NCBI GenBank assembly: GCA_904063045.1
Contig: CAJFCJ010000002.1
Coordinates: 434,001-498,000 of the forward strand
Origin: Dimorphilus gyrociliatus
Lineage: Eukaryota; Animalia; Annelida
DNA length: 64,000 nucleotides
Direction of reading: 5' to 3'
Shown: piece by piece, positions 35,401 to 59,716 of the stretch
Layout: every line of letters begins with the position of its first letter
How positions within the stretch are numbered: position 1 is the first letter of the stretch
The notes under the pieces: model-generated
Told to the model about the DNA's origin: nothing
What the model saw: only the letters and a program-made list of their open reading frames with translations
The model's database searches: none
Program-made: the position numbers and the translations under genes

Positions 35401-35444
35401 GCAATCAAATTTATAAGAATATATAGTATTCCGTATGCTAACAT
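26419..35444 (-). CDS. Receptor guanylyl cyclase B (NPR1/NPR2-like), 15 exons
   Basis: Exons 35444-34721, 29983-29872, 29776-29584, 29486-29348, 29291-29073, 28955-28868 (TM), 28813-28714, 28615-28514, 28426-28346, 28262-28086, 28017-27852, 27791-27103, 27035-26864, 26809-26711, 26654-26419; all phases are consistent. Kinase-homology HGNLKSSNC; cyclase [41 protein letters not shown] with the GTP-specifying E and C. Confidence 0.93.
34721..35444 (-). CDS. First coding exon (V35) of rGC-B: signal peptide plus N-terminal ligand-binding region
   Basis: 724 nt (241 codons +1); [25 protein letters not shown]; donor AGA A|GTAAGT, phase 1. Confidence 0.9.
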
Positions 35445-36002
35445 CCTTCCGTGTAACTTTTTTTTCTATTTTACAATACTAAATATCCATCGATCAGGGC
35501 CTGTAGGTGTATAAGAATACACGTATAATACACAGTGAATTTCTTATTGTTGACTTACTCTTAAAAGGCGCTCACAGTAAGGGAAATCGATGAAAAAATT
35601 TTCCGTTCTATGTAGCCGTAGAAATAAAATAAATTCAAAAAATCTTTCTCATGCAGCTGCTACTGTAACAAACTGCGGCCGTATAGGCAGGCGCCTGCTC
35701 GAACTTTAAATGCGTTTGTGTGAAGGAAAGTCAAAGTTTTATGCGCATGCGCTCTGATAAATGAGCAAATATTTAGTTTCGAGCTCTGAAAAGATAATCT
35801 TCAATATAACTTATAAATATATATATTTTTCAATTGTTCAATAGGGTTGGAAAGAAAGGGTATACAATGTCATTTTTTATTACGTTTCTCATAAAAGTGC
35901 GTTTTTTCTGAAGAAACTCTCAGATATCTGGGACATGTAACTCTTTATGATACAAAATATGTATAAACATGAGTAAAAAAACGTAAATTAATATTAACTT
36001 AT

Positions 36003-38099: not shown

Positions 38100-41000
38100 T
38101 TACGGTAAGCTATTCTTGTCTGTTAAAATGTGACCGTTTTGTAGAACCCTGGGTAAGTCGGGGTTGGATGAGTCTAATAAGTTGGAGTTTTGAACAGTAG
38201 AATCCAAAGATGAAGACTGGTTGAGACGAATATTAGGAGTTTGAATCCGGTAATCGCATGCATTTCTCGGAGCGAAATCTGGATAATCAGGATGTAATTC
38301 ACCAATTAGCCAGTAAGTGAATATCGCGCCCTTTCCCTGTTTTAACATTTAATGAATTGTTAAATATATTATCGTCCCATACAGTCAGAAAATTAGCTTA
38401 TTATTGAGGAAAAAATTCTGTGCCCGTTTCGATGATCATTCGAAATGCATTGAGGGGAATATTGTATGCAAGGGACAAGTTGTGATTCAATAGATGGCGC
38501 TTTTTTGATTAATATTTTCCATCTTTTCCTGTATTTAACAGCTATATTTATAGCGAAGATGTTTGAGCATTCTTCGCTTTCTGTTTTCAAAGTTTTATCC
38601 TGTTTTTACATGACTACTCTTACAAGGAATTATTAAGGCTTATAAATGTCTTATATTCCCGCTTGAAAGGAAATTGAACGCAAATTAAATATCCTGTAGT
38701 TTCTTTATATTAGAAATATTTGCTTATGATTCCTTATTTAGCTGTCTCAATTCTAAAATATCAATAGACACTATAATTAATTATATAGAGGCGTAAAAAT
38801 TTATGACTATCTTGATTTATAATTGGTAACATCTGCTTTTACCGTTTTTGTTGATTGCAGACTAGTTGAATTGAAAATATTCCCCTATCATATTCTATTA
38901 TTTTACTTTTAAATAATGTTTTGAAAAGGACTATGCGTAAATTTTTTATATAACTCTAGATAATATCTAATACTAGAAACAAACTTTCATGTCAACTGGT
39001 CCTCGATCTTCTGTTTGGAAGGTTTGGAATTTATCTAATTCAGTTTTCGTCCAGGGACTTATATGAATTTTGAGGGCTGAAAAGAGTTTCAGGTGTTAAT
39101 TAGTTTACATAAAAACAGAATATGTTACCTTCTCCATTACTCTCCATCCGACTTGCAGTATTAACTGTATCCCCGAATAGACAATATCTCGGCATCTTTG
39201 ACCCAACGACACCAGCTAAAACTTCTCCAGTGTGTAATCCTATACGAAGTTTTAACTGATCATTTGGCCTGTGGGGAATTCTGAACGCTTTTACGGCGTT
39301 TAACAAAGCCAAAGACATTCTAGCAATCTCTCTAGCATGGAGATCAGTTCGCTTCGGTAAACCAGAAGCAACCATGTAGGCGTCTCCTATTGTTTCCACC
39401 TATTTTATTTAAAAGATATATTTTTTATTTGAAATTTTAAAGTTGTTTTGTAGATTAGATGAAGCTAATACGCACCTTGTATACATCAAAATTATTGATA
39501 ATGGAATCAAAAGTAGTATATAGTTCATTTAACAAAGTAACGACTTGTTCGGGAGTACTTTCAGCTGATAATTTGGTAAAACCGCATATGTCAGAAAAAT
39601 AAATAGTCACTTGGTTGAACTGCTCTGCTTCCACTTTACCATCCTTCATTAACTGTACAGCAACAGATTTTGGAAGCATCATGTATAATAGGTTTTCAGC
39701 TTTCTTCTTCTCTTCCAAATAATCAGCAGTACGTTCTTCGACTAGGGTTTCCAAATTTTCGGCATAGTGCTGCATACGAGAGAGTAACTGTTCCATTAAT
39801 GGTTCGTTGCCCTGCCTATTAGCCAAATAAAGAGTGAAAATATGAATGACAGATGCGTGAAATTGAAGAAGATGATTTGTAGCACTTACTTATTTACTCG
39901 TTTTAAAGTTGCCCTTAAAGTATGAAAATCGGGCCTCTCTAGAGAATCTTCACTCCAGCATCTTTCTATTACATTTGCCAATTCTTGATAGCTTTCAGCC
40001 GTCTCAAGAGCAGTTTCAATTTCCATTAATGTTGGCCTATAAAAAGGCTTTTGCCTATCCTTTACTTTTCTATATATTTCTGGAGGCTCGAAGTCTTCAC
40101 CATACCGCCAAAATGGTCCATTCCGGTAAATTATTTCCTGACAAATAATCGCGAAGCTGTAAACGTCTCCCTTTTGACTACCAGTATCAACCGGATTCCT
40201 TAATAACTCAGGAGCTGTCCACAATTTACCTAAAGGAGATTAAACAGAGTAAGAGAAATTACCCGTTATTAAAATGCTTAATCTCTTACTTTTATAATAA
40301 GCATAAGTGTCTATGCTCTGTTCTTGATTACTCGAACGCCGCGACCTCAAAGAAAATAATCCGAAATCTGTGATTTTCAAAACAAATCTGCTATCCACTA
40401 CACAATTAGAACTTTTTAAGTTTCCATGAGTTTTTATTTCGCTACTGTGCAAGTAAGACATTCCCTATTGAGAAAAAGTATATTTTTATTATAACACAAT
40501 AAGTTGTAATGAGTCTTTATAAACTAACTGCTGTACGAGCAGTTCTGCTTGTTATTCAGAATGAGAGAGATCATTTCTATATTCATAGATATGTACTTAC
40601 TTTTACAATATCTTGCATTAAAGAGAATTTAAACATAGCATCCAATTTGAGTTGTTCGTTTCCTAGAACATCTTCTAAACTTCCCTTAGAGCAATATTCC
40701 GATATTATACATTGATTAGGTTCATCTATACAAAAACCAATGAAGCGGACAATATGATCATTTTGTAAATCCTTCATCTAAATTTTTAGAAAACAAAACA
40801 ATTTTTTATATTACCCTCCATATAATACTTATTTCTGTAGACCAACCCTTTTAAATTCCAAAAGTATACTTTTTGAAGGTGGATTTGCCACAGGTTTAGA
40901 TATCTTTTTTATTGCAACATGAGAATTTTTAAAGTTTCCGACTTTGGTGTACATTTGAGGTCGGCTAAAGTTGTTTAATAAACTAATCATCGACGTATTT

Positions 41001-42344
41001 GTAGATTCGGTTATGGAGTCTCTCTGCTAATGCGAAAAAAAAATCATGTTCTGTTGAAAAAACATTAGCTTGTAAATCATCAAGATAATTACATGTATAT
41101 TAGGAACTCTATAATTATGATCACCGCCACCAAAATCGATATTCTCCCATTGAATTTTCCATAGACTGTCAGGTATTACTCTATCCTTAAAAATTCTGCA
41201 AAAATGCGAAAGTATAAAAGCTCATAATCAAGAGAGTAATATTTTATATCACACCTTCGATATAGGACTACAAAAACAAATCCAAATACGATGAAGATAG
41301 AAACAATAATAATCAGGATAATATAGTAGCTGGGAAAATCTGATGTCGTATAAAGTAAAAGCATTAGAATAGACAGTAAATTTAAATATCATAACATTAC
41401 TTGTTTCTCTGCAGCCTGAGAAACCACACTTTGGAACATCAGGAGGAGGAGCGTCTCTTCCTTCAGGCCAGTGTATTTTATTGGGAGTACTTTCATATTT
41501 TTTACTATTACCATAATAGTTCGCGACAACATGAAATTTTTCACCGTCAGCATTCAAATCGAGTAACGAATAATCGGCATTTCGGTCACCATTAGCGTCA
41601 ATGCTTACAGTACCAGTAATTCCTTTGAAAGTCTTATTCCACATATGACGAGTTATAGTTCCACCGTCGGTTGCATTTTTACCTTCGGCTAAAGTTTCGT
41701 TCAGAGCAAGAGCGTAAAGAATGACAGCATCATGAAAAGCTCCCACAAAACTATTAACTTCCTCATTTTCATCCATTTCTACATCTCCATACATCTCTAC
41801 AGCTTTTTCTCTAACGGCCTTCGAAAAGTTCATATACAGATCACTTTCTGGCTTTTTTAAAGTAACTGTCATGAGGGCATGGTATGCCTTTTTAGCCCTC
41901 GTATCTTTTCCATCACCTCTTACCCAACTCTGTCTACTCTGGTTTTCGCTATGAAAAAAGAAGGAAAACGAAACTTTTAACTATTTGAACAAGATTTGAA
42001 TATAGATATTTCTTAGTGGGTGCTAATTATAAACTATTTGGTAAGCTTGTCTTTTATTTAGTTTATTCTGTTATCTTGCCCTTGGCTAATTTGTACAAAA
42101 CAGCATACGGAAATTGACCAAATAAATTGAGTATCCGTTACATAACAACAAAAAAAATGGTTACTGCTATTTAAAGATTGTTACTTTATATCTATTCCAA
42201 AAGGGAAACTATAATTTTTATGACAATTATACCTGCTAAAGAGGTCAATGTTAAAGAAGACATATTCCCCATTTGTGAAGCCCAACTCGTCGGCTTTAAG
42301 CATGATGTGGCGGACCGAATCAGGATTGGCACAGAGGACAACAA
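38100..42344 (-). CDS. Receptor guanylyl cyclase A constant region (C-terminal ectodomain, TM, kinase-homology, cyclase), 12 exons; no start codon or signal peptide of its own
   Basis: Exons 42344-42233 (phase-1 acceptor tttcAG|[52 protein letters not shown]), 41948-41401, 41339-41255 (TM), 41195-41093, 41026-40847, 40777-40601, 40464-40290, 40229-39890, 39815-39476, 39399-39129, 39076-38985, 38336-38100; all phases are consistent and catalytic motifs are intact. Confidence 0.93.
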
Positions 42345-43231
42345 CTGAAAATTTTAAATGGATTTAGTTATGAAAATAACAATTAAAACAAAGGAGATCG
42401 ATAATTATAATTATGATATGAAATAATAATGAGGTGCACTCTTATATTTGCCCCTGAGGTTCTGTTCACTCAATATAAAAAACATTTCAATTTATCTAAC
42501 AAATATGCCTGATTCTAAGAATAATATACTCCATTGACTATTGAAATATTGAGATAAACGACTATATAGTCGTCCAGAAACGAAAGCAATGACAAAAAAA
42601 TTGTCACTATTTTATTAAAATATGCATATAATATACGTCTTTTTGCTTAATATCGAGGAACTCAACCCAGATATACAAGATTTATTCATAAAATGCCTAC
42701 TATATGAATTAATCTCGTAATTAATATTGTTAGCAATTTAGGGACTGTTCGATTTTTCGAATTATTCGCTCGAAAAGACACAGTATTGAATTAAAATTTC
42801 GATATCCTGCAGCGAATCTTTAATCTCGCCTGATCGACAAATCGGGACAAAAACGGTCCACCAGAGATCGGTTATATAAAGTCGGCTACTAGGTAATAGA
42901 CGCTTTCGATTTTTTTAAGTACAAGCATTATCAGTCATTTTCCCTTGTCTTTACGTTGACAGAGGGTAATTTATCCTTATCAAAGAAATCTTAGGTTCGT
43001 TTACTTAGCCAAAATGGAATAAAAACGTCGGACAAATATTTACGGTAGTAGCGATATAAAAGAAAGCAGCAAGGACTGGCGCAAACTCTCGATTAATACT
43101 GACTGAAATGTTATAGTACTACCAAGTAGGGTTTTGACGTGGATGGCTCAAATTCTATAAATTTATAGTTAGAAATCCAAATATGATTAAATCATTAGTT
43201 GTTTGACCACTTAAATGTAAAACACCCCAAC

Positions 43232-43928
43232 CTCTGGAGTTTGGTCGAACTTTCTCTTGCAGAATAGTACCAAATATGTCATCCAGGACCGTAATGTTCT
43301 CAAACTCATCAAACATCTGGAAGTTTATTTTCATTACTTCTCTATGTTTCCATCCAAAAGAAGATGCTAAATCAGAGCAAGTTGACTGTCCGTTATATTT
43401 TGTTATATAGTTATCATGATACATAAAGGTTACATGCTTGTAATTGAAATTATCTAAAATGGCTTTCAAAAAGTAAGTCGTATCTGAGAATGTTCCCATA
43501 GCCCTTGTTAGAAGGGGAAAGAATGCATCCTTCACTAAAAATGCATCATTCCATCCGCCGAGAGAAATGAGGGGTAACTGCCAACGTTCGCCATTCAGGC
43601 GGGCTACAGTTGATAGGGCAAATTTACAACAAGGTCCAAAAAAAACGTGAACTTTATCAATATTATAAAAATCCATAGCACAAAATATTCCCGTAGTATC
43701 CTTGCATTCTGAGTCTTTAAAAAAAGGTTCAATGGCGAAAACATCCTTATATATTTGATTTACAGTATTCACTGCAATATTTATTGCAGCCGTAACTTTA
43801 ATATAATGAGAACAAGCCTTAATATCTGATTTCTTTGGGTGAATTATTCCGATCTTGATGTTTTGTACTTTCGAATTCACGTCAATAGTCAGGTACATAA
43901 ACAAAAGAAGAGTTTGAGTCCAGAACAT
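43232..43928 (-). CDS. Variable first coding exon V43 of rGC-A
   Basis: 697 nt (232 codons +1); signal MFWTQTLLLFMYLTIDVNS; IKIGIIHP, DSECKD, GPCCKF; donor AGA G|GTTGGG, phase 1. Confidence 0.88.
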
Positions 43929-46772
43929 TTGTAAATTTACATATCAATAGCTGTAGAACTACTTTAAAACTTTCTTTTACTTAAGTAAGTGTATTACAAA
44001 AGTTTTCTTAAGTCAAACATATGTATATAAAAATTTAATATCAAATTTTCGGGAGACTTGACAAACGTTCGAAGCGGCGAATAAACTGCAACTGAAAAAC
44101 TACATACGTAACAAATACTTGGTAGAGATTTTAGGCCTATTCATTAAGTAGAAACGATTTTTCGTAAAGCTTAAAGAAAGTGTAAATAAAGCTAAATATG
44201 AAATGGATAAGCGTTTTGTATTGTGTTGATCAAGTTAACAAATTTTGATTTACTGCTAGGATAATATTCACTGAATGATTAGGTCAAAATACGCTTGTAT
44301 AGGAACTTCTTCGATCTATTAATTAAACTTAAGAAGTTGTCTGTTAATTTTGAGTGTTACACGACCTTTCGATCAAACTGGGCAGATGTTTACACTACTC
44401 TACCAACATATGACCGGCTGTTGTAGAAAATCACCTCGAACTTTATAGCTTAGAAGTTACTCCTAGTTATCAGGCTTACTCGTTAATAACATTAAATATG
44501 TGTTTCCTTACTTAAAGCCTATAATTAAAAGCACCTTCAAAAGAGTTAGGATAAATTTTCTTAACAATAGATGGCGTTTACTTTCCTTTTTATAGAAAGT
44601 TGAAATTAAAAAAAGACTAGTCTGTTTTCTTAGTGTAATAGTACAGTAATATTCTTTGAAAAGGTTTGAAATGGATAAAAATAACCTGTAAAACAAATAA
44701 AAAGACAAAAAAGTACTTATCCATATCAAAAGACAGTTGGTTGATAAGAATCGATTATTATTCGTTTAGTCAAAAAAAAGAAAACAAAAATTAAAGAATT
44801 TTTCAAATCCCTGTTTACAATGTGCTTAATAAAGCAAATAATTTTTAAGTGAACTAGGATATCCGTTAGAGGGCTGTATCGTACTGAAAACGTTTTAAAA
44901 GCGTTCTCCATTGAGCGCCCCCGAGCGGTTTGGATCGGAGTCGATAATATAAATGCGTTTCGTTTCCCTACTAAGAACTTTCGTTACCGAAAGATAGAAT
45001 ACAATACAAATGATTTCCACCAAGAACGCATATATTGATTACGAAGTTTCTAAACGTCAATTACAACTTCAGTTAGTCATTTAGCAAGTGTTTTATAGAG
45101 TTTCTACCAAAGTATTATACGAACATACATATTCTATTTAGGTATTCAGTTTAATACCATATGTACCTGATATAGAATAAATAGGTAGTAATAAAAAGCA
45201 TATTGATGAAAATACGCTGTAAATAGTATGACTTAGTTTTTCCTTTTTATAAAAGTCTTTTTTCTCTGTTCTCATCTTAAAAGCGATTGTCTTAAAAGTT
45301 TTCTTTCGTTTTTTGTTTTTCATTCTCATGAAAAACTTTTAGAGGTAATTCTCAAATTACGAGAGCTTTAACAAACGTGACCATAATTACTGATGGAATT
45401 AACCAAATTAATACGCTGTAACAGTTAAGCCACAGCAAAGATCGAAACCAGACAATTTTTAGAGTTAAAATTAGAACTACTTAAATCTATAGAGTAGTAG
45501 TCGATTTGCAAAAGCCATAAAATGTTCGATAGTAGTAAATAATCAGTTGGTTAGCGTGTCAAATATTAACTAATATCACAATTATGATAAGATATATTTT
45601 CTTTCTATTGTAAGATGCAGAGAGGTAAGAAGGAAGTTACGTCCATCGCAAACGGTTTAAGTTTATGGGAAAAGCTCTTCCAATACATATTTACTAGAAA
45701 AATTTTTTGGTTTTGATTAACTGCTGGGCGCCTAATAATTAATTAAATACGTGCGATTATTTAAATCTTTTACTACAAATATAAGTTTATTTGTGCCTAT
45801 TCCTTTGAATAAAAAATTACAAATTGTATACAAAACAACCTTATTTGCAGGGATTTACAGTTACAAGAGCTTGTTTCTTAGGCCTAATCATTGTATCTTA
45901 AACACGGTTGACTTGAAGTTAGAAAGTAATTAAAGTCGACAGCAAATTGACATGATTACCGGAAAAGTAACGGAACAGGAAATGGACAGGTAGATATCTA
46001 GCAAGTTCTCTTTCAAAATACTTGGAAAAAGAAGTGAGACGTAAACAATAAAAGAAAATATGAAAAAATCTCCGCATTAGGCAAAGTAACTCTTATACAT
46101 ACTGGCAATCGAATAAATTAGACGCCTTTTATTCGTTGACTGACTATGCTTACCATTGGATAGAAATCAATTGAACTAGCTTGGGCGTCATAATTCTAAG
46201 ATAGGATATAGCTCAAGTCGGCTTTTTTATCTCTTTTTTTTATCTCTTACCTTTCAGTAGGAACAAAAATAAGCCAGAGGCTTGTTTAATATAATTTCAT
46301 TACTCTACGCGTACGTGCTCGTCCCTAAATAGGCCTAAAAGAGATGCCACTTTCTCTCGTTTTATCTCAAAATTAGCGTACGAATATTTACTGAAACGTA
46401 AGAGACAATAAGTTGCATCATATTTCTCCCAATAGATTTTCAAAACAAGTTTTATCCATTGATTTAGAAATAATATAAGAATATAATTCTTTGATTGTCA
46501 ATTTACGTTTTAGGGAAATAGACTGACGAAATAATCGGTATTGATTAATGTAATTAATTGTTAAGCATTGATAGCAATTAATTTGTCTTGCCCTTTTTTT
46601 AATTTTTTAAACGATAGTCCTAATACAATAGGGAATGGTGGGAAGAGAAGTAGATCAGAGCTAATACCAGGTATAAGAAAAGATGAAAAAGATGGAATTA
46701 GAAGAAGTAATGGATTACGATTAAATCGAGAGGAGCTAAAATATATTATGCTTGATATAGAAATTTTCATAC

Positions 46773-47520
46773 TTGCATTATTTTTTGCTTTAGTGAGAGT
46801 CTTTTCTATGTCGTTCTGATCAAAGATTAGATAGAGAAATTTCTTTTTCGACTTCTTTACAAAACTATTTGCGAACATGTAACAAAACCTATTAAGTACA
46901 CCCAGATCGGCATCGTTGTCGTATATTAATGCAGCCTTTTTCCATTGCATTTCCTCGAATATTTTAAAAAAGAAACCTGCTAATGACCATGTTGATATTT
47001 CGCTGGAGGATCTGGTGACTAGAGAATAGTCTGATTTCTTCCTTTCTGTGGTCCATTCGAAAGCCATGCCTCCAGCTGTAACTGTTGGTATATTCCAGAC
47101 AGAAGAAAATCGGGAAATTTGCACTAAAGCATAATCAAAAACCGGTCCAAAAAAGACGTTTATTCCATGGTACATATATAATTCCATTCCTGCTCTCATA
47201 GCCAACTTGGCTGAGCAGTTAGAGTCACGATAAAATAATTCAACGTTTTCTTTCTTTAGAATATCCTTCTTGTTAGCGTAATCTAGCGCAAGTTCAATAC
47301 CAGGCGCTATCATTTTAATACTGAATAAATTACGACTATCCCGAGGTAGAATGACAGCCATCTTCACTTTTCCATTATTAGAGCTGCTATTTTGACATAC
47401 ATGATCATATTGTATATTAGAGCCATTAAAAAGTCCTTTCCAATGTTTAAATCGACGGCTTGATTTTGTTAATGTGAAAGAAATAATAAAGAACAATAGT
47501 AGAAGCTTCCCGTGACTCAT
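46773..47520 (-). CDS. Variable first coding exon V47 of rGC-A
   Basis: 748 nt (249 codons +1); signal MSHGKLLLLFFIISFTLTKS; KMAVILP, DSNCS, GPVFDY, VTAGG; donor GCA A|GTATGA, phase 1. Confidence 0.85.
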
Positions 47521-50500
47521 TTTAATTATATTCTTGTAGCAGCACTAGGAGAATTTACGTCATTGACTTTTTATTATCTTCTGATAAATATTGAAGATAA
47601 CTTACACGTTTCTTTGACGAGATAAAAATAAAAACATTCTAGTAAGGATACCGTCCTCTTCGAAAGACGGCAGTAAACTGATAATGCAGTGTGGTTGCGC
47701 TCATGCTTTCAGAGACAGGAATGATAACAGCCTACCTTTGGCGCTATTGTAGCCGTAATACATGTTGAAGTTTGCTAGTTTACATCAAACGTATACAATT
47801 GAGTAAATTAGGTAATTATGAAATAGATACCTATTTTATATATATTTCTTTGTCTTTATAAGTAATTTTTCTCGTTCATGACAAAATAAAGCTATAAATA
47901 TTACAGCGAAAGACTTTTTTATTTACGGATTAATAAATGAATATAAATATACATCAATTTACACAAAAGCGACTATTACTGTAAACATTGAGTTAGATTA
48001 CCAAAGTAACAAATAGAAAAGCTTTTCTGGATGACTTAGTATAAGATATTTTATATTGCTTTAGTTTAGAAATTATGACCTTGGTCACAAATGTTTGCTA
48101 TTAGAATAGCCCTCATACAGAACAAAATGAGAATTAATATTAACAATAGCTAGGCACAAAAAAAGATTATTCTTTCAACAAAATCGACGTAAGAAAATCG
48201 ATTATAATGGATTTAACAAAGATTATTGTACAATGCTTATAATTTTAAAAGAATTAGCACCTCTCCCTCTTTTTTAAATATACAACATTCTCAGGTCGTG
48301 TGCATTTTTAACTAAGCAAAATCATTAGAAACTAAGCAGTTGGTCGCTTAGAGTAAGCATCTTTGTGAAGGGTACTTGTGGTTTATGACAGAATGCTGTA
48401 TTTGGTTCGATTCTATATTTTCAACTGTTTTATGGACAAAACACTAAACTGGAATCAATTTTGTTGTTCGTGTAAATTACTGGAATATTTGTGAAGTCTA
48501 GTCATACTAAAGCATTCTTTTGTTACATGTCTTATGTTTCTCAACCATTTTAGATGTTATATTCAGCATCTCTTTCTACTTTTTCAGCTTCTCTTCGTAA
48601 TCAGAAACTGCATATACTTTAATACTGTTAGTCAGTATTATTCTATTAATAATATTTTTCTTTTGTATACGTTTAACAGACAAATAAAAATACTTTTGTT
48701 GTTTCTAAAATCAAACGAAATGAATAAAGCAAATCACTATTATGGGAAAGCTATATAACTTCCAAGATATAGCTTAATTTGATTCCTTTCAAAGAACGAC
48801 TTTTTAAGATAGACGTTATACGTACTATGACTACTATGTATGTTATGTCTCGCTTACTGTTACTGATCAATCTACAATAAATATGCATATTTTATACTAT
48901 TAATATTATTATTGTTGTTTTCTATTTGTTTGTATATATTAAAATTGTCGGATATAGCCTGTCTCGTGGTTTTCTGAGTGAGTAGTTTTTACCCCCGCAG
49001 TGCCAAAACCAATCTTATTTTATGCTTAACTTAACAAAACAAAAAAGAAAAGACTAATCGTTTTGCACTTGATCAACTTAATGGCAATTCATGTTTGTCA
49101 TGAAGAATGTTTATAACATTATCCCGATATTTATTAAGTGACGTAAATAAAAAGCGTTTAATGCGTTAAAAGTATAACTCTATTTTTATAACTTAATTTG
49201 GAAATACTGTTTACTTTTAATTATTTTTTTTGCAGTATTAGTTTGCGGCATTTAAATGAAAGGAAAATGGAACTCTAACAGAATAATTCCTAGAGCTATT
49301 ACTTTTACGAAAAGAGGAAAAGGGCAAAATGAATTTATAAATAAATCTGTCTTAACGTACACCTGAATAATTTCAAACTACGTGCTCCAAAAGTACACTT
49401 TTAAAGTACTCCGTCCGTTTCAAAGAGGCCTTTTCCATCGATTTTTATCTTTTATAAGTTGCACTATTAGTATATTAACTACAACCTCTTTTCCGGAGAT
49501 GCTACAAGCTATTGAACAAAAAATATATTAAAAAGATTTGTCCTCCAAACCTAATAAAAGTGGATGGTAACAGTATACAATTACAAATGAAATCCTCAGC
49601 TATCCGAATAGCAATCTTATGCAAAAACGAAACGACAACGATTTTTCTATAAAAAAAAAAACAGGAAGAATATGCATTTGGCAACATCTTATCATTCCCG
49701 AATACAAGCGCTAAACTACCTAAAGGTTAAAATCGGGAGGTTGGAGGAAAACGGAAGTTGAGAAAAAAACGGAAGTCGGAATGTAATCGCATGCGGGTCC
49801 TAAGTGTTACGTTCAGCGAGGGATGAAAGACGAAGTGTTGGCTGACGATTATAGGGATAACGATTGTTCCATACATCAAAAAATTTCTGTAAAATATCCA
49901 GTCTTTCTTCTCAAAACTGCACAATAAAAACTTTTGAAAATTATCATGGTGGTGTACTTGTTATAGCTACTTTACAAGGAGGGAATATTAGCTAACTAGC
50001 TAGCTATCTCAAGGAAAGAATCACACCTATTTTAATAATACCATTAGATAATTTGGCGTTGTCTTTTATTCTTTTCAAATGTAATTTATCTTCGCATAAC
50101 TTTCTTTCACGGTGAAAAGTCTCGGGGACAATAAAACTGATTAGGCCAATTACTTAGAATAAGGGCCAAAACGTGCGTAAATCTTGTAAACAAGTTGGGT
50201 CAGGTAGTCATCAAAAACAATAGGACAAAGCGTGTATTCTTTACATTACTCTTTTTGTGAAAAGTAAAGAAATTGGTAAAAATTTAATTAAATGTTTTAC
50301 AAGACATCTCACCTTGTAATACATATAGAATATCCCTTAAAATTAATTCATACGGAAGTTTTTCATCGTTTAACGATGACTTCTGAACAATTAAACTAAC
50401 AATTAGAAAAAGAATCTTTTCTTTTTCAAATTTATTGCATTATGTTAACCTATTTTATAAAACGTGATTTGAATAAAGAAATGTCCTATGATGTTTCTTT

Positions 50501-53500
50501 TATAGAGTTGAAATCTAGTGTATTGATTTATATTCCCATCCTTTTATGTTACTCTTCTATTTTGGAATAGTCATTACAAAAATATTGTAGCCTTTCAATA
50601 CTGTTTGATTTAAGAGATGTGAAGATTTATCTCTCATGGTTTATCGCTATAATATACACTGACTAGTCTTTGTATGTTAAGATGTATAGAAGAGATCTAC
50701 AAACTGCAAACTCTCTAGTTTTTTAAACGGTTTAGAGAGTTTTAGTTTACCTCTTTTCGATTTTGGACTCCATCCCGAAGGGAATTTGTCATTTTTCTTG
50801 TGTCTCTTAGAACAACTAAGTTGTGCCAATAGTGTTTCTAGAGGATAGGCAATTTCGCTTTTGTAGATTTCTCTTCTTTCGTTGGTAAAAGCTACACTTT
50901 CAGATAAATAATGTTTAAAAGATCATGAGAAACATCGTGCTGCTATAATTGTAAGTTTTCATATCCTAATAGTCACACACCTGGAGCAAGAACTAAATCG
51001 TCTGCTGGATCAATAATTACTAATATACCTTTGAAGGTATATATCTCTACTGTTCACATAGTAGGATATCTCAAGTCTGATCGGGAATCTTCAAAGTACA
51101 AATTAAATCTTTTTTTTAGGAAGCATTTCTCTAACTTTATCAATAGCCGGCTTTACAAAGGGTGCTGTCGTTTTGATAAAATATATAATATATCTTCTTG
51201 TTTAGGAACTAAAATGGCAATATTGATGCAATTATTTAGTAATAGTAGATTTCGTTCCGCTCCTCTCTATGCAAAAGTAGTAGCAGAATCAAATTCCCAA
51301 TTATTAATGTAATTTTCAATTGACAATATAAATGACAATTCATTTAACAACACACCTATCAATAACGAGCTTGGGTGAATATGTATAGAAACAAAGTTAA
51401 AAAATAACTTCTGACGTTTTTTTCCTTTTAGAATACGCGATGAGTATAGATTTATTATAATGCTTAATTTAGATTAAGATATTATCTTAAAATCCTTAAA
51501 GAGAAATTTGGTTAGCTATTTATAAAAATACTTGTAATAAGTATTAAAATAAGTTTACGTATGCAAAAATTTATTTACAATTCAACTCAGTGAGTCAACG
51601 ATTATAGCATTCTGTTTAAAGCGAACAATAGAATTTGCGCTAATATAATTAAGATTGAAATATAGAGGGAAGGAAGTGGTTTACATTAATCGATTGTTTT
51701 CGTTCTGCTGAAATATTAACTTTGCTGTCAAACGTTGACAGTTAAACTCGACGATACTTTACTGTAAAGAAACTACGATTTAAAATGTTACAAGGCTCGC
51801 TTGCTCTTTCTGAGTAGACAATATTTTATTCTATTGCTATATGTTTTAATTCACATTGCTCTTGATACTAATAAAAGGAGATGCTAGATGAGTAGTTTTC
51901 TCGACAAGAAGAAGGAGAGAAACTATGTGAAAACAAGGAGAGAACCTTGAAAGTTATTTTTTTTTTAATGAATAATAATTGATGTAGAAGTTAATGCATA
52001 GTTTTGATCTCGGAAGTAAAGCTGGTATTTCTTATCGGATATATATGTTATCTACATTTTATAGAGAATACCTTAATTATTTATCATTGTATAGGACTTC
52101 CTCAGTGAGATAATGTACACAAAAAAGCAAATTATTATCATCAATTATTAAAACGTAAGTTTGATGAAGAACTAAATAAAGAGAGAATAAGTATAAATCT
52201 AGTTGATTCGATACTTGCATAGCTATCAGTAGTCTCATAATAAAGAAAAAAATTTTCTCATATTCGTATAAAGACTCATTTATATTAGAAAAATGTTCTA
52301 CAATGTACGAATTCATCATGCTCTCTATACGTCTATTGAAAGGAGGTCTTATCTGAATTATACTTAGCACAAAAGATGGCGCATCTGGTGCCGAATTATG
52401 ATAATATAGAAATTAACAAAAGAATTTACAACAAAAAATGGTTGCGACATTAAAAGTTATTTTTAGAGATTAACAACAATTTTATCAGATGCCAGATTTA
52501 TTATATTAGGAATTTTAAATAACTTTAATTAAGAAAATAGTTTACTCAGTAATGAAATTTCGTATATTTTGCCTTAGAAAAGATAATAAACGCTGTTGAT
52601 TTAATAGAGCAGAGCCTGTAGTTTTTCAGACGTTAATTAAAAGCGCTTGCTTGCTCTACACCAAACTTAATTGAATTGAAACATTCATTTGTAGTACATA
52701 GTTGGGTTTTTGTTACCTTTATGCGATTTTTAAGCATACTTTAATATCTCAATCTACTAATACACAGTCTCAAGAGGTTTTAAGGACTGAAAGCGATCCT
52801 TTTTTTTGCACCATACTGCGAGAAGGCAATTTCAATGAACATCCATCGCCATCTGCCGGTACACTTGTCGTTTTTAAGAGCTTATAATTCCCATGAGTGA
52901 GCAAAAAACTAGTAAGGTATGGTGACACAACAGCGTAAAAGTGTATCCATTTATATACTTTATATTCGCAATTAAATAGTTTATGTACAACGTAAATGGT
53001 ACGTATAGGTTATTATTAATTCTTCCACGGTGATTTACTCAATTACAAGCCTTCCTGTATAAGTTTCAAATAAGCGTGCTGAGAATATTAGCTTATACAC
53101 CGTATCTAGGACGGAAATTTAGTTGGAATTCTAAATGAGCAATATAATTCTCATTTTATCTATTACTAACTACCACCCACAGTCCAAGAGGGGAATAGAG
53201 AAAAATTGATAGCTATTTATTTTGTATTCAAATAGTATTTACCGGATATGTAAGACTAATAAATCAGTTGTTTATAATGGCTAAAAATACTAATAAAAAC
53301 ACATCTCATTGACAACCTCCGCTTTTTTTTGTGTAAAAAAAAATAATTACATAGAAAAAAGTCAAATTGTCATTTCACAACCTAAGTGTAAAGCTTCACC
53401 TTTAAAAAGCTTCTAGTCGTGCATGTCGCAATTTAACACTGCGGAAACGGAGCCTTGGGTTGTTCATTTTAAAATAGTAGCTATAGATATAATAATAATT

Positions 53501-55749
53501 ATAAAGGACCCATAGACGTTTAAACTGAGTTTCGTTTACCCCTTAACATTTTCCCAGGGACTCACTTTCGCCTTTCCATCTAACCCGCCTTTTTAAACAC
53601 GATCCCTTCAAAAACTAAAGAGCCGTTAGCGGTCTATAAATTACATCTAACAACCCCATTAACTAGCCTTAATCGCCTCTAGTTTTATACAGCAATTGAA
53701 AAGAAAAAAGTTGGACTATAGTGAAAAAATATAATATTTTTTCCCATTAAACATCAATAAGTTAAATAAGTAATGATAATAATACTTCAAAATACTAGTA
53801 AGCTTTATAAATAATCCTATTAAATTCTATCAATGTCGAATTCTATATAAGTCCTTGTTATTTCTTCTAACAAAACTAACCCTTCGAAAATTAGGTGAAG
53901 CTGAAGCGAAAAAAGTGCAGTCAACTGCAATGAAATGGCGTGATACAAAACTCGAATGAAATATGGAGAAAATATTATTGGAAAACTGCAATTACGTCAA
54001 GAAAAAATGTCTTCCAGTCGTTGTGCGTTAAGAACGACACGCCAATATTCGCATGACTGTATTGTTCATAGACACAAAAGAGAGTGAAATGTATATTACA
54101 ATTACAGAGCTTATGGGTTTATATGAGAATATATAATAAAAAAAGCTATGAGGTCGAAAATATGATGATGATCAAAGTGGACGCCGAAGCGTATTGTATG
54201 GAATTTAAGGAGTAAATCTAATCCCTTTATCTAATTTCCTTTTGTACAAGACAAAACAGTTCGTATCTGACTTTACATTATAAAAAAGAAAAGCCTATAC
54301 CTATACCTGAGAGGGTGTAGCTTTACTACCTTAAAGAATTGATTAGTACTGGCTGAACCCGTGCCAGCAACATGTGAATCCGTGTTCTAAGTTTACGACA
54401 GTGAAAAAAATTATTTTATCCCGTATGTTCGTGTCGTATTGAGTTAATAAATTCAAAAAAGAAAAGAAGTTATATTTGCAGTAAGCGTCTAATCGCCTTA
54501 AGTTTTAGAGGTCGATAAATAATAAAACGATGAAACAGTGGGAGGAGCTGTGAAAAGCCCTAATAGGCATCAATAATGTAAATAAAATTCTTAATTACGG
54601 TCGTCACCTATCCTTAACCTTAACAGCTTAAAGTTAACAATGACAGATAATCAAATTTTACCGTAATATCTATTTTCGCGTATCAGTGGCAATAAATCGA
54701 GAACACCTGTAATGACGCTATTAATGAAAGTAAATAAGTCTAGATCAAACAGAAATAAAAGAAATATAAATAGCAAAAATATTTGTAATAAAATCTGATG
54801 AACATGTCTTTGTTTCGTGACAAGTTAAAGAATTAATTACCCTCAAATGGCTCATATCCTATGAATACTAAAACTTTCACAAATGAAGAATTATTCTAGT
54901 GTATTTCTAAACAGTTAAGAAGATAAATGATAACAATCTATTGGATTCCGCTTAATTTAATTATATATATATGTCGGATTAACAGTTGAAAAGCGATTAT
55001 AGAAAAGAAAAAAATATAATTAAGCGTAAACAAACGTCTGACAAAATGTTTGACCGAAAATCGATATACTCGGATTACATTTAAAAAATTGGCATCAGTA
55101 AACTACTTAAAGGAAAGGTAAGTCTTATAAAAAGTCAGACAATATTACTTAAAGCTCATACGTTATAGTTGAGAAAGGGGTAAAATGCGCTGAATTGTGT
55201 CTAGAGGGAGTTTTGTTTTTAAAATTAATATCCTATTTTGCGTGCTAACAAATAATAGAACATATTGTCTGGTATATACAAAAGTGTGTATAAGAGTTGT
55301 TAGATGTAGATTAAATTAAAGCTATATGAAGATTTAATATGCTATACGAATACGAGCATTAGTTGTTGTTTGATGGAAATTCCGTTTATCCATGTTTGAT
55401 GGAGGCTTCATAATCATGGATAATATTTCATAAATCGACAGTAGACCCTCTCAACAGTTAATTATCGATTTGCAAACAAGCGTTTAGTAAACATTGTATA
55501 TCTTCTCGCCTTTTTCCTGCTATTGATTATACTTTTATCTGGATTAACGTTTTTACGTAGCTATCGTAATTTAATGCAGTTGGTTATAGAGTTCGATATA
55601 TCGCTGCTGGCTGGTCGTTATATTAAAAGCGTAACATGAGCAATCATCGATATTAATAATTTAAAAACATATATATTAATAAATAAAAAATATAAATAAA
55701 CTAACTATTCAACGCTTATGATAAATAGCGTATTATATATAAATGTTTA

Positions 55750-55781
55750 TATATATATGCTGTATATATATATATATATAT
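55750..55781. repeat. (TA)n microsatellite (a second tract lies at about 56085-56106)
   Basis: TA runs read directly. Confidence 0.8.
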
Positions 55782-56545
55782 CATACGCGTTGTATACTCT
55801 TATTTATATTTATAAATGAATATTATTCGCGAAAAGCCAATAACTTATCTCGAAAATAGATACATTTAAGGGTGTAAATAATCTTTATGCATGTTACATC
55901 CGCTAGGATATATACAAAAAAAGTATTTGCTCACATATTGAATATTTTGTCTTTGTGTGTTGCATATTGAAATTTTCCAGGTAGAAAAACTTTAAACACA
56001 CGTTAATTCGTTACGTGAACCATATGTTTCAATAGAACACAATTGATATTTTGAGAAAGAATATCATTATTATACTGCTCATGATATATATATATATATA
56101 TATATAGACGTACTAACGTATAACTTATTAGCACATGAAATATAGACAGCGTTTGTATCTATAAGAATATTTCTCGTAGAAAATATATATGTATCAAATA
56201 CTGTATATACAATATATTTATATATATATAACTGTATATTTCTATATATAATGTATATGCATTTAACAGGGTGGAATTTCTAGTACTGTACCTGATTTGT
56301 ACTCGCGTCTCTTTTTTTATATCTATAGCTCGAACTCCATCAATTACTATAGTTACCGAAAGCAAATAGGCCTACAAACCAACGAACAATTTCCTGCGCG
56401 TTAGCAAGAATTTTGGTTCTTTCTCTACAATAATCTTACCCTCCCTTTTCATACAACTCTCTTTCTTTATAAATTGGGCTTAATCTTTTTATAAGAATCG
56501 CCTTCCTTGTATTAACAGTTGTAAAAGAATTAATGATTTCCCTAC

Positions 56546-57287
56546 CTGCGAACTTATTTCCCACTTCTTCCTTCAGCAGTTCCTCCACATACTTATCTGG
56601 CATTGAGTATGTATAAACTGGCCCTGACGAATTCCTAGTTACGAGAAGCTTATAGGTGTCGTATTTTGCTTCGGTGTCACCTAACACTAAACTTTCTGTT
56701 ATCAATCTACAAATTCTTGGATAGGTTGAAGAAAAGGAATCAAACTCCCATATAGCTTTCAGTTTCTTCCATTTGTTTTCTTGTCTTATTTTTTTGAAAA
56801 AATCTACTAAAGACGTTGGAGATGCTGGCCCCGCTCTTGTTATTGGATATGATGCTTTTTTTCCAAAATCTCTTGCTAGTCCTCCAACAGTTATTAATGG
56901 AAATTTCCAGATGCTGAGCTGTCGGGCCAATGGGGCTAATGTGTAATCGCAAATGGGTCCCAAGAATCCTGTGATGGTACCGTTTACATAAAAGTTAATG
57001 GCTTCGTTCATACCATCCGTGTCGGTGCATTTAGAATCTCTGTACTTTATGTCCAATTTATATGGAGTTAGATAGCCATATTCGACAATTTTTTTCTGTG
57101 CAAGAACTGCTGCTGGTTCCAGCTTATTTTTTCCAAAAATTTTATTCTCGAAAGGAATAAGCGTTGCTATCGTTAATTTTTTTTCATCTGTGAATCCTCT
57201 TTTCGAATATTTTTTGCCCGTTTCGTGCCGAATCTTAGTAAATATCGGCTCGATAACGAGGAGCAGGAACAAGGTCGAGATTTTCAT
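56546..57287 (-). CDS. Variable first coding exon V57 of rGC-A
   Basis: 742 nt (247 codons +1) from ATG 57287 (MKISTLFLLLVIEPIFT); LTIATLIP, DSKCTD, GPICDY, ITVGG; donor GCA G|GTAGGG, phase 1. Confidence 0.83.
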
Positions 57288-59019
57288 GCTCAGCGTCCTT
57301 CCATCTGCATCTCGGCCCGCGGTAACTGATTCTTTTACTGAATAACTTTCTCGAGTAATAAATACTCTTGCGGAGTCATAAAATTTTCTGATATAAATAA
57401 AGTTTGAGCGGCGGATAAAATTCAGTGAACGATATCCGAAGTACAATAAAAGTCTGAGAATGAACGGTGACGTTAAGCGCCCCCTAGACTTAGGAGCTAG
57501 CTATGAGTGCATAGATAATTAGTACGTCATCACTCATTATGCACTCCTCTTTTTCCTTCAGTATATGTTATTTAGATATTTACTCTTCAGAACACTTTCT
57601 GGAGATAACTGCTTGTATGCTCTTGTTAAAGTACAAATTTATGATTGTCTGTTAGAAATAAATTCTAAAAATACACATAGATTTCCGACAAAGCGGTAAC
57701 GTCGATAAGCGTTTTGTTTACATGATTACGAATCGTGACTTATTCTATCTATATTTCAACAATTGCCGTAAAATAGTAAAGCAACAGAACTCGAAGCGGA
57801 TTGCGGTTTAATTTTCTTATCGTCAAAAGATTTGACTATATAAAATATTATTAAAAGACTGAGATATGACATAAATTAATAAACGAAATGGAAAAAGAAA
57901 GCGTAATATCAATTTAGAAGTGTTTACGAAAAGATAGAACAGAAGCCTTGAAATGGAATTGATGACTAAATTGTATGGAATTCTTGCATGGTTTCTCGTT
58001 ATTCGTCCCCCTATTCTTATTTCAACCGTAATTCTCGTGGAGCCTTTGGTCAAAAATCAATAGAGGCAATTTATTGTCTTTTAGCTGTTTTATTTCCTAT
58101 AAAAATTGTTAAGTAAACAATAAAGGTTTTTTTCGCAAGTATGAAAGAAGAAGACTATGTACATATTTTGCAATTGAAATTTATTTCTTATTTATTAAAA
58201 TGAAAAGAAAACAAGAGCTGGTATCAATTGCCTGATTAAAATACTGAGCCTCATCTACTTGATTAGAAACAGAAGAACTATGCAAGACACGCTACTGTTC
58301 TAATTTCAATTTAGTATCCAAAATATCGAACTATTGCTGTTGACGTTCGATGAAAAGAACAGTATTTCTTTTACTGCTTGGCATTATTTCGAATAGGCCT
58401 TTAACTAAAAGGCTAACGAAGTTTATTCGAGTTGCAGACAAAGAACCTGTACCCTATTATTCATTCTAAAATGTCAAGTTTTTATTCTTTACCAATTATG
58501 CGTTCGGTCTTATGGCTAGTGGCATATAGCAGGTTTTTTGGTAATAATTGCCTATTCTTTAATCAATCGTTTGAGTATAGATGGCAGCATCGTTTTTTTA
58601 CGCTCTTAATGTTAATCAAAGAAATATAGGTTCATACGTGCAATGTTTTGTAATATTAGAAAATGTAAGTTTGTACATAGATATTATCTTAATATCTCCA
58701 CAGTACGTACTGTATATGTACATATACGGTTTTGAGAAGAAGGTACGAGTAAACAACAGTCTCGTTTCTTATGATCTTTTTCTATCTTTATATTCTATAT
58801 TTTCGCCTCTTCAACCCCCTGCTCTGTTCTTTAACTCAAAAAAAAAGATAAAAAGCGTTCAATTACAAATGCGTCACTTCGGGTCTGCGGTCGTAAGTCA
58901 CGATCAAAGTGACGACCTACAGCTTTTTTGATGCACAAATCGTTGCTGCTTCCGTTTTACGCGTCACCTACCAACCGCGACAATGGCCTATTAGGGATGA
59001 TAAAAAAGAATCTTCCTAC

Positions 59020-59716
59020 CTGCGTAACGTAATCCCAATTTATTCGTTAAGATATCTTCTATATTCTTCAGTATAATATTTTGATATTCAACCTCCGCTT
59101 TTTTAGTAGTTAATTTCTTCTCAATGGCATCTGCGCTCAGCAAACAAAATCTAAAAACTTTGTCTTCAAATGCCTCTCTTTCATACAATATCAACAGTCT
59201 ACTCCAGCCAAATCGATTGACAATAGTTAGAATTGCATCAGCCAGTGAGTTTGCTGTTGCTCCAATCCTAGTCAAACGGCCGTACATATCCTTCTTTTTG
59301 GAAAAATCATAAGCGAAAGCACCTGCTGTTATTACAGGTATTCCCCAATATTTGAGTTCCCTTATGACAGGAGCCGCTACATAATCACAGGCTGGGCCTA
59401 TAACCATGTAAAATTTTTCCTTTTGCAAAAGTAAAAAGAGCTGATGAATTCCCAACGAAACATCGCATTTGGTATCTCTAAGGAGAAGTTCAACTGTCAC
59501 CTCTCCGCCAAGAATGGTATATAGTGAATTGTTGGATTTTGTTGAATCATTTTGTAGAGATTGAAGGGCGACTTCAATACTTGACCGCACCATTTCCATG
59601 GGATATATAACACTGCTGTTCAGTGGTAATAGCACAGCAATGCTAATATTTTGGGAGTTTGCGGTAGCGATGAGAAGGAGTAATAGGAAAGAGATGCTCA
59701 ATACGTTTCTAGCCAT
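59020..59716 (-). CDS. Variable first coding exon V59 of rGC-A
   Basis: 697 nt (232 codons +1); signal MARNVLSISFLLLLLIATANS; ISIAVLLP, DTKCD, GPACDY, ITAGA; donor GCA G|GTAGGA, phase 1. Confidence 0.83.

What the first reader, a model, noticed from the sequence alone, without database searches (positions are those of the whole stretch)
38100..59716. Protocadherin-like variable/constant architecture in a receptor guanylyl cyclase: four alternative ligand-binding exons feeding one signalling module
Seen in sequence: four stop-free exons (59716-59020, 57287-56546, 47520-46773, 43928-43232) each encode a signal peptide plus ~230-250 aa of an ANF-receptor-type ectodomain. All lengths are 3n+1, all end at the same homologous position in a GT donor, and none is followed by its own copy of exon 2. 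The only compatible phase-1 acceptors downstream are 42344 (rGC-A) and 29983 (rGC-B). The four exons are highly divergent from each other yet intact, which argues for selection rather than decay. Established knowledge: variable-first-exon/constant-exon arrays exist in clustered protocadherins and UGT1A; NPR-type rGCs bind Cys-ring peptides in the N-terminal two-lobed ectodomain. As I recall, vertebrate NPR1/NPR2 intron 1 lies at this same position, and many ANP-contacting residues fall in exon 1. Inference: one locus makes at least four receptors with different ligand pockets but identical TM, kinase-homology and cyclase output. I know of no described case in rGCs, but could not search.
Basis: partly seen in the sequence, partly recalled or inferred. 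Interest (0 to 1): 0.93.

Follow-up and report, generated by a model that had tools for sequence, protein, structure and literature searches.

The report
Alternative first exons in receptor cyclase
A hormone-receptor-type guanylyl cyclase gene of the tiny annelid Dimorphilus gyrociliatus has four interchangeable first exons, each encoding a different outer half of the ligand-binding domain. The layout is real, but the same design already appears in database gene models of the related gene in many other animals, so it is old and widespread rather than unique.

Summary
Five intact signal-peptide plus ANF-receptor first exons lie on the minus strand, all with phase-1 GT donors. Constant exons occur only twice: rGC-A (38100-42344) and rGC-B (26494-29983).

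The three orphan exons are not relics.
- A related species keeps the same order and the same donors.
- dN/dS is 0.05-0.19 for all five exons.
- Conservation stops at the donor.
- A profile of 95 homologues finds no hidden constant exons.

RNA contigs from a sister lineage give direct evidence. One 3.2-kb transcript joins the V57 donor (56546) to the exon 2 acceptor (42344), skipping V47 and V43. V43 and V47 each carry a template-switch adaptor at an initiator-like start site. Splicing of V43, V47 and V59 to exon 2 is inferred, not shown.

The window is Dimorphilus gyrociliatus. Its published model DgyrCDS1026 starts inside exon 2 and has no first exon.

The design is not unique. Database isoforms of the NPR1-like/gcy-28-like gene in molluscs, a nemertean, a flatworm, a crinoid and a hemichordate share an identical ~825-895-aa constant part. 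They differ in ~225-270 N-terminal residues at the same junction. I found no paper describing this. It is a real and interesting new member of a known kind.

The parts
59020..59716 (-). V59: alternative first exon (signal peptide + 232 aa of ANF-receptor ectodomain, G-class ending ..GLRYA), phase-1 GT donor at 59019-59018
   Evidence: Stop-free translation. Pfam ANF_receptor E 5e-23. Ortholog intact in the relative, dN/dS 0.049. Donor GT conserved. No RNA evidence obtained.
56546..57287 (-). V57: alternative first exon (247 aa, G-class ending ..VGNKFA), shown spliced to exon 2
   Evidence: dN/dS 0.19. In a 3191-nt RNA contig of run X8, the sequence after exon 2 matches 56549-56578 with 0 mismatches.
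46773..47546 (-). V47: alternative first exon (CDS 47520-46773, 249 aa) with a 26-nt 5'UTR; mapped 5' end at 47546
   Evidence: dN/dS 0.13. Template-switch oligo sequence is attached at 47546 in run X11, and a contig ends exactly at donor 46774. Initiator-like CTAGTG at the start site.
43232..44093 (-). V43: alternative first exon nearest the constant region (CDS 43928-43232, 232 aa, R-class ending ..RPNSR) with a 165-nt 5'UTR; mapped 5' end at 44093
   Evidence: dN/dS 0.062. Template-switch oligo at 44093 in X11, and the contig ends at the donor. TCAGTT initiator-like motif.
42233..42344 (-). Constant exon 2 (112 nt): the shared phase-1 acceptor for the V exons
   Evidence: Acceptor ttttcag|TTGTTG. 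Intron 41949-42232 is removed in RNA contigs of X8, X10 and X11. In-frame joins with all four V exons.
38100..41948 (-). Constant exons 3-13 of rGC-A: second half of the ectodomain, transmembrane helix, kinase-homology domain, coiled coil, cyclase domain, stop
   Evidence: Exact mapping of DgyrCDS1026 (P0270) onto the window. Pfam domains. The ectodomain half aligns to NPR1 residues 223-426, E 8e-47.
34721..35444 (-). V35: the single first exon of the tandem paralogue rGC-B (R-class ending ..RKKAR)
   Evidence: dN/dS 0.09. Groups with V43 in the tree.
26494..29983 (-). Constant exons of rGC-B
   Evidence: tblastn and HMM.
53501..54500 (.). Conserved non-coding island inside the V57-V47 intron; possible regulatory element (function not tested)
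   Evidence: 91-92% identity to the relative against a ~70-80% background. No ORF. No Rfam hit.

Best explanation
rGC-A (DgyrCDS1026 of Dimorphilus gyrociliatus) is an NPR1/GCY-28-type receptor guanylyl cyclase. Its 5' end is an array of four promoter-plus-first-exon units: V59, V57, V47 and V43. Each unit supplies its own start codon, signal peptide and roughly the first 210 residues of the mature ectodomain, equivalent to NPR1 residues 1 to about 210.

Transcription starts at one unit. That exon's phase-1 donor is spliced to the single acceptor of constant exon 2 (42344). Any V exons further downstream lie in the intron and are removed, because they have no acceptor of their own. The result is up to four receptors with different outer ectodomain halves but the same inner ectodomain half, transmembrane helix, kinase-homology domain and cyclase.

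Shown: the exon array, selection on every V exon, the absence of private constant exons, the V57-to-exon 2 junction, and separate 5' ends for V43 and V47. Inferred: splicing of V43, V47 and V59 to exon 2; that the isoforms differ in ligand or dimer specificity; and cell-specific choice of V exon. The design is inherited: orthologous genes across Spiralia and Ambulacraria carry it.
For: - Five intact ANF-receptor first exons, all with phase-1 GT donors.
- Constant exons occur only twice.
- An independent genomic contig from a relative keeps the order V57-V47-V43-constant-V35, with a separate contig for V59, and all donors are conserved.
- dN/dS is 0.05-0.19, and codon-position identities (0.80-0.86 / 0.90-0.92 / 0.50-0.70) are typical of coding sequence.
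- Read-through tails after the donors differ in length and sequence between species, so conservation ends at the donor.
- RNA: X8 contig record 13 (3191 nt, depth 81.5) runs exon 3 - exon 2 - 77 nt whose consensus equals 56549-56578 exactly.
- X11 contigs carry the reverse complement of a SMART template-switch oligo at 44093 and 47546, on initiator-like motifs.
- The V43 and V47 contigs stop exactly at their donors, and the exon 2 contigs stop at the acceptor. That is what a graph branch between spliced and unspliced forms would produce.
- Orthologues: isoforms of one gene in Mytilus, Mercenaria, Haliotis, Argopecten, Ostrea, Saccostrea, Crassostrea, Mya, Biomphalaria, Lineus, Macrostomum, Antedon and Ptychodera are identical over 823-896 C-terminal residues and differ only in the first 223-270, at the same junction.
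Against: - Only one junction (V57) is seen directly.
- The RNA comes from a sister lineage about 90% identical in exons, not from the sequenced strain.
- Logan contigs break at branch points, so no V43 or V47 junction contig was listed, and some V47 and V43 signal is unspliced read-through (X8 record 19, X11 records 5 and 8).
- V59 has no RNA evidence at all, because it lay outside the one 6-kb stretch that could be laid.
- V47 lacks the second Cys of the conserved ANF-domain disulfide (GPVFDY), in both species.
- No shared promoter motif was found upstream of the V exons.
- The adaptor was identified from my memory of the oligo sequence.
Confidence: 0.8

Rival explanations
1. Only V57 is a working first exon of rGC-A. 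V59, V47 and V43 are transcribed separately and end unspliced, giving short secreted half-domains or nothing useful.
For: Only the V57 junction is seen. X8 record 19 reads through the V47 donor into the intron, and X11 has intronic depth of 4-8 downstream of V43 and V47.
Against: All three exons have dN/dS of 0.05-0.13, as low as the undisputed first exons. Their GT donors and phase are conserved, while the read-through tails are not. Half of a periplasmic-binding-type fold is unlikely to be stable on its own (established knowledge). Contigs break exactly at the V43 and V47 donors, which implies a second continuation there. Orthologues in other phyla have 2-4 such first exons annotated onto one constant part.
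Confidence: 0.12
2. The array mainly serves regulation: different promoters give different cell types or stages, as reported for C. elegans gcy-28.c versus gcy-28.d. On this reading the protein differences between V exons have little consequence for ligand choice.
For: gcy-28.c is broadly expressed and gcy-28.d is restricted to a few neurons including AIA (PMC9249223, PMC3842693). Separate start sites for V43 and V47.
Against: The V exons are only 21-33% identical to one another, yet each is strongly conserved between species. Two V classes recur across phyla. Both points argue that the sequences themselves matter. This reading is compatible with the best explanation rather than exclusive of it.
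Confidence: 0.3
3. Assembly artefact: constant regions between the V exons were collapsed or lost, so the 'orphans' are really first exons of separate full genes.
For: None found.
Against: An independent assembly of a different species (a 67.8-kb Logan contig) has the same spacing and no constant exons between V57, V47 and V43. V59 and V57 are only 1.7 kb apart. The RNA contig joins V57 directly to exon 2.
Confidence: 0.02

Closest known systems
NCBI isoform models of 'atrial natriuretic peptide receptor 1-like / gcy-28-like' genes in molluscs, nemerteans, flatworms, crinoids and hemichordates
   Same: The orthogroup is the same: the constant part is 51-64% identical over the second ectodomain half. 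The design is the same: 2-4 N-terminal variants of 223-270 aa on an identical constant part, with the junction immediately before (V/I)VVLCA. The two V-exon types are the same, ending ..S.x.R or ..(V/I)Gxx(Y/F)(A/S/G).
   Different: Those are automatic gene models, and I found no paper discussing them. In Dimorphilus the array sits in a very compact 17 kb and is absent from the published annotation. A tandem paralogue (rGC-B) kept only an R-class exon.
C. elegans gcy-28 isoforms (gcy-28.c, gcy-28.d)
   Same: The databases name this receptor family 'gcy-28-like'. The isoforms are driven by different promoters with different expression (PMC9249223, PMC3842693).
   Different: I could not verify with these tools whether the worm isoforms differ in a coding first exon at the homologous junction. 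I recall that they do, but the key papers were not held.
Clustered protocadherins and UGT1A (variable first exon / constant exon loci)
   Same: A tandem array of paralogous first exons, each with its own start codon and apparently its own promoter. Each is cis-spliced to one shared set of constant exons, and downstream V exons are removed as intron.
   Different: There are only four V exons. No shared promoter element like the protocadherin CSE was found. The V exon encodes half of one domain rather than a whole ectodomain or substrate-binding domain. Stochastic single-cell choice is untested. The proteins are unrelated.
Vertebrate NPR1 / NPR2 / NPR3
   Same: The closest solved structures: the constant ectodomain half aligns to NPR1 residues 223-426 at E 8e-47, and V57 aligns to NPR1 residues 57-172 at E 3e-9. 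Same domain order.
   Different: Vertebrates obtain receptor diversity from separate genes, each with one first exon (established knowledge). Here a single gene swaps the outer ectodomain half.

Membership tests
Receptor guanylyl cyclase, NPR1 / GCY-28 type | Extracellular ANF-receptor (type I periplasmic-binding-protein-like) domain | tested here: met
   Pfam PF01094 covers the V exons (profile positions ~2-157) and exon 3 (238-352). The best PDB matches are NPR1 and NPR3.
Receptor guanylyl cyclase, NPR1 / GCY-28 type | Single transmembrane helix, kinase-homology domain, C-terminal class III cyclase domain | tested here: met
   Hydrophobic stretch [23 protein letters not shown]. PF07714/PF00069 and PF00211 hits. 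The whole constant part equals DgyrCDS1026.
Receptor guanylyl cyclase, NPR1 / GCY-28 type | Makes cGMP in response to a ligand | not testable with these tools
   Needs expression and a cGMP assay.
Variable-first-exon / constant-exon locus (protocadherin, UGT1A type) | Tandem paralogous first exons, each with a start codon, and no constant exons between them | tested here: met
   The same holds in the relative.
Variable-first-exon / constant-exon locus (protocadherin, UGT1A type) | Each V exon spliced to the same first constant exon | tested here: inconclusive
   V57>exon 2 is shown. V43 and V47 have only indirect support, from contig breaks at the donors. V59 is untested.
Variable-first-exon / constant-exon locus (protocadherin, UGT1A type) | Own promoter for each V exon | tested here: inconclusive
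   Adaptor-tagged 5' ends at 44093 (V43) and 47546 (V47) on initiator-like motifs. No data for V57 or V59.
Variable-first-exon / constant-exon locus (protocadherin, UGT1A type) | Shared conserved promoter element and stochastic cell-specific choice (protocadherin-specific) | tested here: not met
   No 9-mer is shared by 3 or more of the five 400-nt upstream regions. This was a crude test. Cell-level choice cannot be tested here.

The most novel reading that the evidence does not exclude
The alternative first-exon array is an ancient, conserved and so far undescribed property of the NPR1/GCY-28 receptor gene. On this reading at least two V-exon classes (R and G) predate the split of annelids, molluscs and nemerteans. 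One gene has therefore encoded several receptors with distinct outer ectodomains since early spiralian, perhaps early bilaterian, times. Vertebrates replaced this arrangement with separate NPR genes.
Probability: 0.45. Interest if true: 0.78.

Novelty: new member of a known kind. Interest (0 to 1): 0.6.

Why it matters
Ligands of invertebrate NPR-like cyclases are largely unknown. This locus shows that one gene can present several different outer ligand-binding halves on the same signalling core. That multiplies the number of receptors to be matched with peptides, and it means counts of rGC genes underestimate receptor diversity.

The published Dimorphilus model lacks any first exon, so analyses based on it miss the signal peptide and half of the ectodomain. 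The compact 17-kb array, in an animal with a very small genome, would be a convenient system for asking how promoter choice selects a receptor variant.

The comparative pattern also suggests an evolutionary story: the same junction in many phyla, with two recurrent exon classes. In that story exon arrays in invertebrates do the job that gene duplicates do in vertebrates. It appears not to have been written up.

Tried and rejected
- I first guessed a placozoan, from genome size, GC content and marine metatranscriptome hits. That was wrong: P0270 (DgyrCDS1026, Dimorphilus gyrociliatus) maps exactly onto the window.
- A profile search with the five V exons found only genomic read-through ORFs and no spliced transcripts in the allowed length range.
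- The representative search was lost once and re-run. Its best hit was only 65% identical, so it gave no close full-length handle.
- Searches with P0009 and P0270 as long handles found no dinophilid full-length transcripts.
- Scanning metagenome contigs for the first 30 nt of exon 2 found nothing.
- Rfam found nothing in the window.
- No shared 9-mer lies upstream of the V exons.
- An AU test could not reject a single lineage-specific clade of the Dimorphilus V exons (p 0.16 and 0.12). Orthology of the V classes across phyla is therefore favoured (delta lnL 21-24; R class is one side of a branch at SH-aLRT 88) but not proven.
- The papers on gcy-28 gene structure (Tsunozaki 2008, Shinkai 2011) were not held.
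Full report
**What is in the sequence.**

Each begins with Met and a hydrophobic signal peptide. Each matches the first ~150 positions of Pfam ANF_receptor, with E from 1e-13 to 5e-23. Their lengths (697, 742, 748 and 697 nt) are all 3n+1, and each ends at a GT.

A fifth exon of the same kind, V35 (35444-34721, GTAAGT donor, also phase 1), opens the neighbouring gene rGC-B. tblastn with the five exons finds no further copies or fragments in the window. The exons are only 21-33% identical to each other.

**Constant exons occur only twice.**

tblastn with every stop-free piece of the two constant regions found paralogous matches only between 26494-29999 and 38103-42363.

I also built a profile HMM from the constant parts of 95 full-length homologues. 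I ran it without filters against all six-frame pieces of 12 aa or more. The real 37-aa exon 2 copies score 4e-16 and 6e-8. Nothing between 42364 and 64000 reaches even E=10.

V59, V57 and V47 therefore have no private exon 2 or any later exon. All four upstream V exons join in frame to the acceptor at 42344.

**The orphan exons are not relics.**

The protein search returned ORFs from another species, and their contigs could be fetched. One 67.8-kb genomic contig carries V57, V47, V43, the constant exons and V35 in the same order and spacing. A second contig carries V59.

- All five orthologues are intact, and all five GT donors are conserved.
- No constant exons lie between the V exons in the relative either.
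- Nei-Gojobori dN/dS is 0.049 (V59), 0.19 (V57), 0.13 (V47), 0.062 (V43) and 0.090 (V35).
- Identity by codon position is 0.80-0.86, 0.90-0.92 and 0.50-0.70, the signature of coding sequence.
- The tails obtained by reading through each donor differ in length and sequence between the species, so constraint stops exactly at the splice donor.

This rules out decay. The independent assembly also rules out collapse.

**RNA evidence.**

Only one 6-kb stretch could be laid, so I chose 41600-47599. It covers exon 3, exon 2, V43 and V47.

Three runs (X8, X10, X11) hold transcripts of a sister lineage about 90% identical in exons. All three remove the exon 2/exon 3 intron.

- **V57 junction.** In X8 a 3191-nt contig of depth 81.5 runs through exon 3 and exon 2. 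It then continues for 77 letters that do not lie on the stretch. Their 30-nt consensus matches the window once, with no mismatch, at 56549-56578, which is the 3' end of V57. The three bases CTG are shared by the intron and V57, so the junction is exactly donor 56546 to acceptor 42344. This splice skips 14.2 kb that contains V47 and V43.
- **V43 and V47 start sites.** In X11, contigs covering V43 and V47 end upstream in CCCCGGCCGTAATGGCCAC. I recognise this from memory as the reverse complement of a SMART template-switch oligo, which marks cDNA 5' ends. The ends fall at 44093 (165 nt before the V43 ATG) and 47546 (26 nt before the V47 ATG). Both sit on initiator-like motifs, TCAGTT and CTAGTG.
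- **Contig breaks.** The V43 and V47 contigs stop exactly at their donors. The exon 2 contigs of X10 and X11 stop at the acceptor. A separate low-depth contig carries the unspliced intron. This is what an assembly graph does where spliced and unspliced continuations diverge. It is indirect support for use of those donors, not proof of their partner.
- **V59.** It lay outside the stretch and has no RNA evidence.

**Identity of the genome and state of its annotation.**

A search with a long handle returned DgyrCDS1026 of Dimorphilus gyrociliatus. It sits on a contig of 4,604,474 bp, the same length as the contig of the window's own ORFs.

Its 872 residues map exactly onto 42303-38103 in twelve exons. 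The published model starts at an internal Met of exon 2. It therefore lacks a signal peptide and half of the ectodomain, and none of the V exons is attached to it.

**The design is shared with other phyla.**

The same searches listed many 'atrial natriuretic peptide receptor 1-like / gcy-28-like' isoforms from single loci. I compared them directly.

In each species below, isoforms of one gene are identical over the last 823-896 residues. They differ only in the first 223-270 residues, and the break falls immediately before (V/I)VVLCA. That is the same junction as ...A|[10 protein letters not shown] here.

- Bivalves: Mytilus edulis, M. californianus, Mercenaria (four N-termini), Argopecten, Ostrea, Saccostrea, Crassostrea, Mya
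- Gastropods: Haliotis rufescens, Biomphalaria
- Nemertean: Lineus
- Flatworm: Macrostomum
- Crinoid: Antedon (three N-termini)
- Hemichordate: Ptychodera (three N-termini)

**Two classes of V exon.**

The V exons fall into two types by their last residues.

| Class | C-terminal ending | Dimorphilus exons |
|---|---|---|
| R | ..S.x.R | V43, V35 |
| G | ..(V/I)Gxx(Y/F)(A/S/G) | V57, V59 |

In a quick maximum-likelihood tree of 46 V exons, the R class forms one side of a branch (SH-aLRT 88; 0 of 500 label shuffles as clustered). V43 and V35 fall inside it. V57 and V59 fall in a G-class group with molluscan exons (support 93). V47 sits next to the R class.

An AU test does not reject a single Dimorphilus-only clade (p 0.16 and 0.12). 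The great age of the two classes is therefore the favoured reading but not an established one.

**Relation to known receptors.**

| Part of the protein | NPR1 residues matched | E-value |
|---|---|---|
| Constant ectodomain half | 223-426 | 8e-47 |
| V57 | 57-172 | 3e-9 |

The swapped part therefore corresponds to roughly the first 210 residues of the NPR1 ectodomain. Whether this changes ligand choice, dimer pairing or both is inference.

**Literature.**

Searches for receptor guanylyl cyclase together with alternative first exons or promoters found nothing relevant. Nothing was found for this species.

For C. elegans gcy-28, held papers state that the c and d isoforms are driven by different promoters with different expression (PMC9249223; PMC3842693). 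The papers that show the gene structure were not held. A paper on placozoan cGMP signalling read early on (PMC7400543) turned out not to concern this organism.

**Verdict.**

This is a variable-first-exon, constant-exon gene. One junction is proven, two further start sites are mapped, and all V exons are under selection.

It is not a one-off. The same architecture is present, though apparently undiscussed, in gene models of the orthologous receptor across several phyla. I rate it a new member of a known kind with good but not exceptional interest. The comparative angle is the part most worth following up.

Noticed in passing
window 38103-42303 (minus): The published gene model DgyrCDS1026 starts at an internal Met of exon 2 (MLKADELGF...). 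It lacks any first exon, signal peptide and the first half of the ectodomain. The V exons are not part of it.
   Followed up: yes
window 53501-54500; also 35501-36000, 33001-33500, 51647-52000: Non-coding islands are 90-95% identical to the relative, against a 65-80% background. One lies in the V57-V47 intron, one just upstream of V35 and one in rGC-B intron 1. They have no ORF and no Rfam hit, and may be regulatory elements.
   Followed up: partly
window 46773-47520 (V47): V47 has GPVFDY where all other V exons have GPxC(D/E/K)(Y/F). It therefore lacks the second Cys of the conserved ANF-domain disulfide while keeping the first. The relative shows the same change, so it is a fixed feature.
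   Followed up: partly
V exons versus their flanks, window 43000-60000: Third codon positions are only 50-55% identical to the relative in V59 and V43 (70% in V57), whereas the surrounding introns and intergenic DNA align at 65-80%. Either the non-coding DNA of this compact genome is widely constrained, or the alignments flatter it.
   Followed up: no
window 47547-47570 (minus strand, upstream of the V47 start site): A CRE-like TGACGTAA lies about 10-17 nt upstream of the mapped V47 5' end.
   Followed up: no
loci L001-L008 and runs X8, X10, X11: Two different relatives of the sequenced strain are in public data. One is about 73-82% identical in the V exons (genomic Logan contigs) and one about 90% identical (RNA runs filed under three organism labels). 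This fits a complex of cryptic species.
   Followed up: no
proteins P0283-P0285 (Ptychodera) and P0277, P0011, P0278 (Antedon): In the two deuterostomes the alternative first exons are all R-class. In Ptychodera they cluster by species (support 98). First-exon duplication has therefore also happened independently within lineages.
   Followed up: partly
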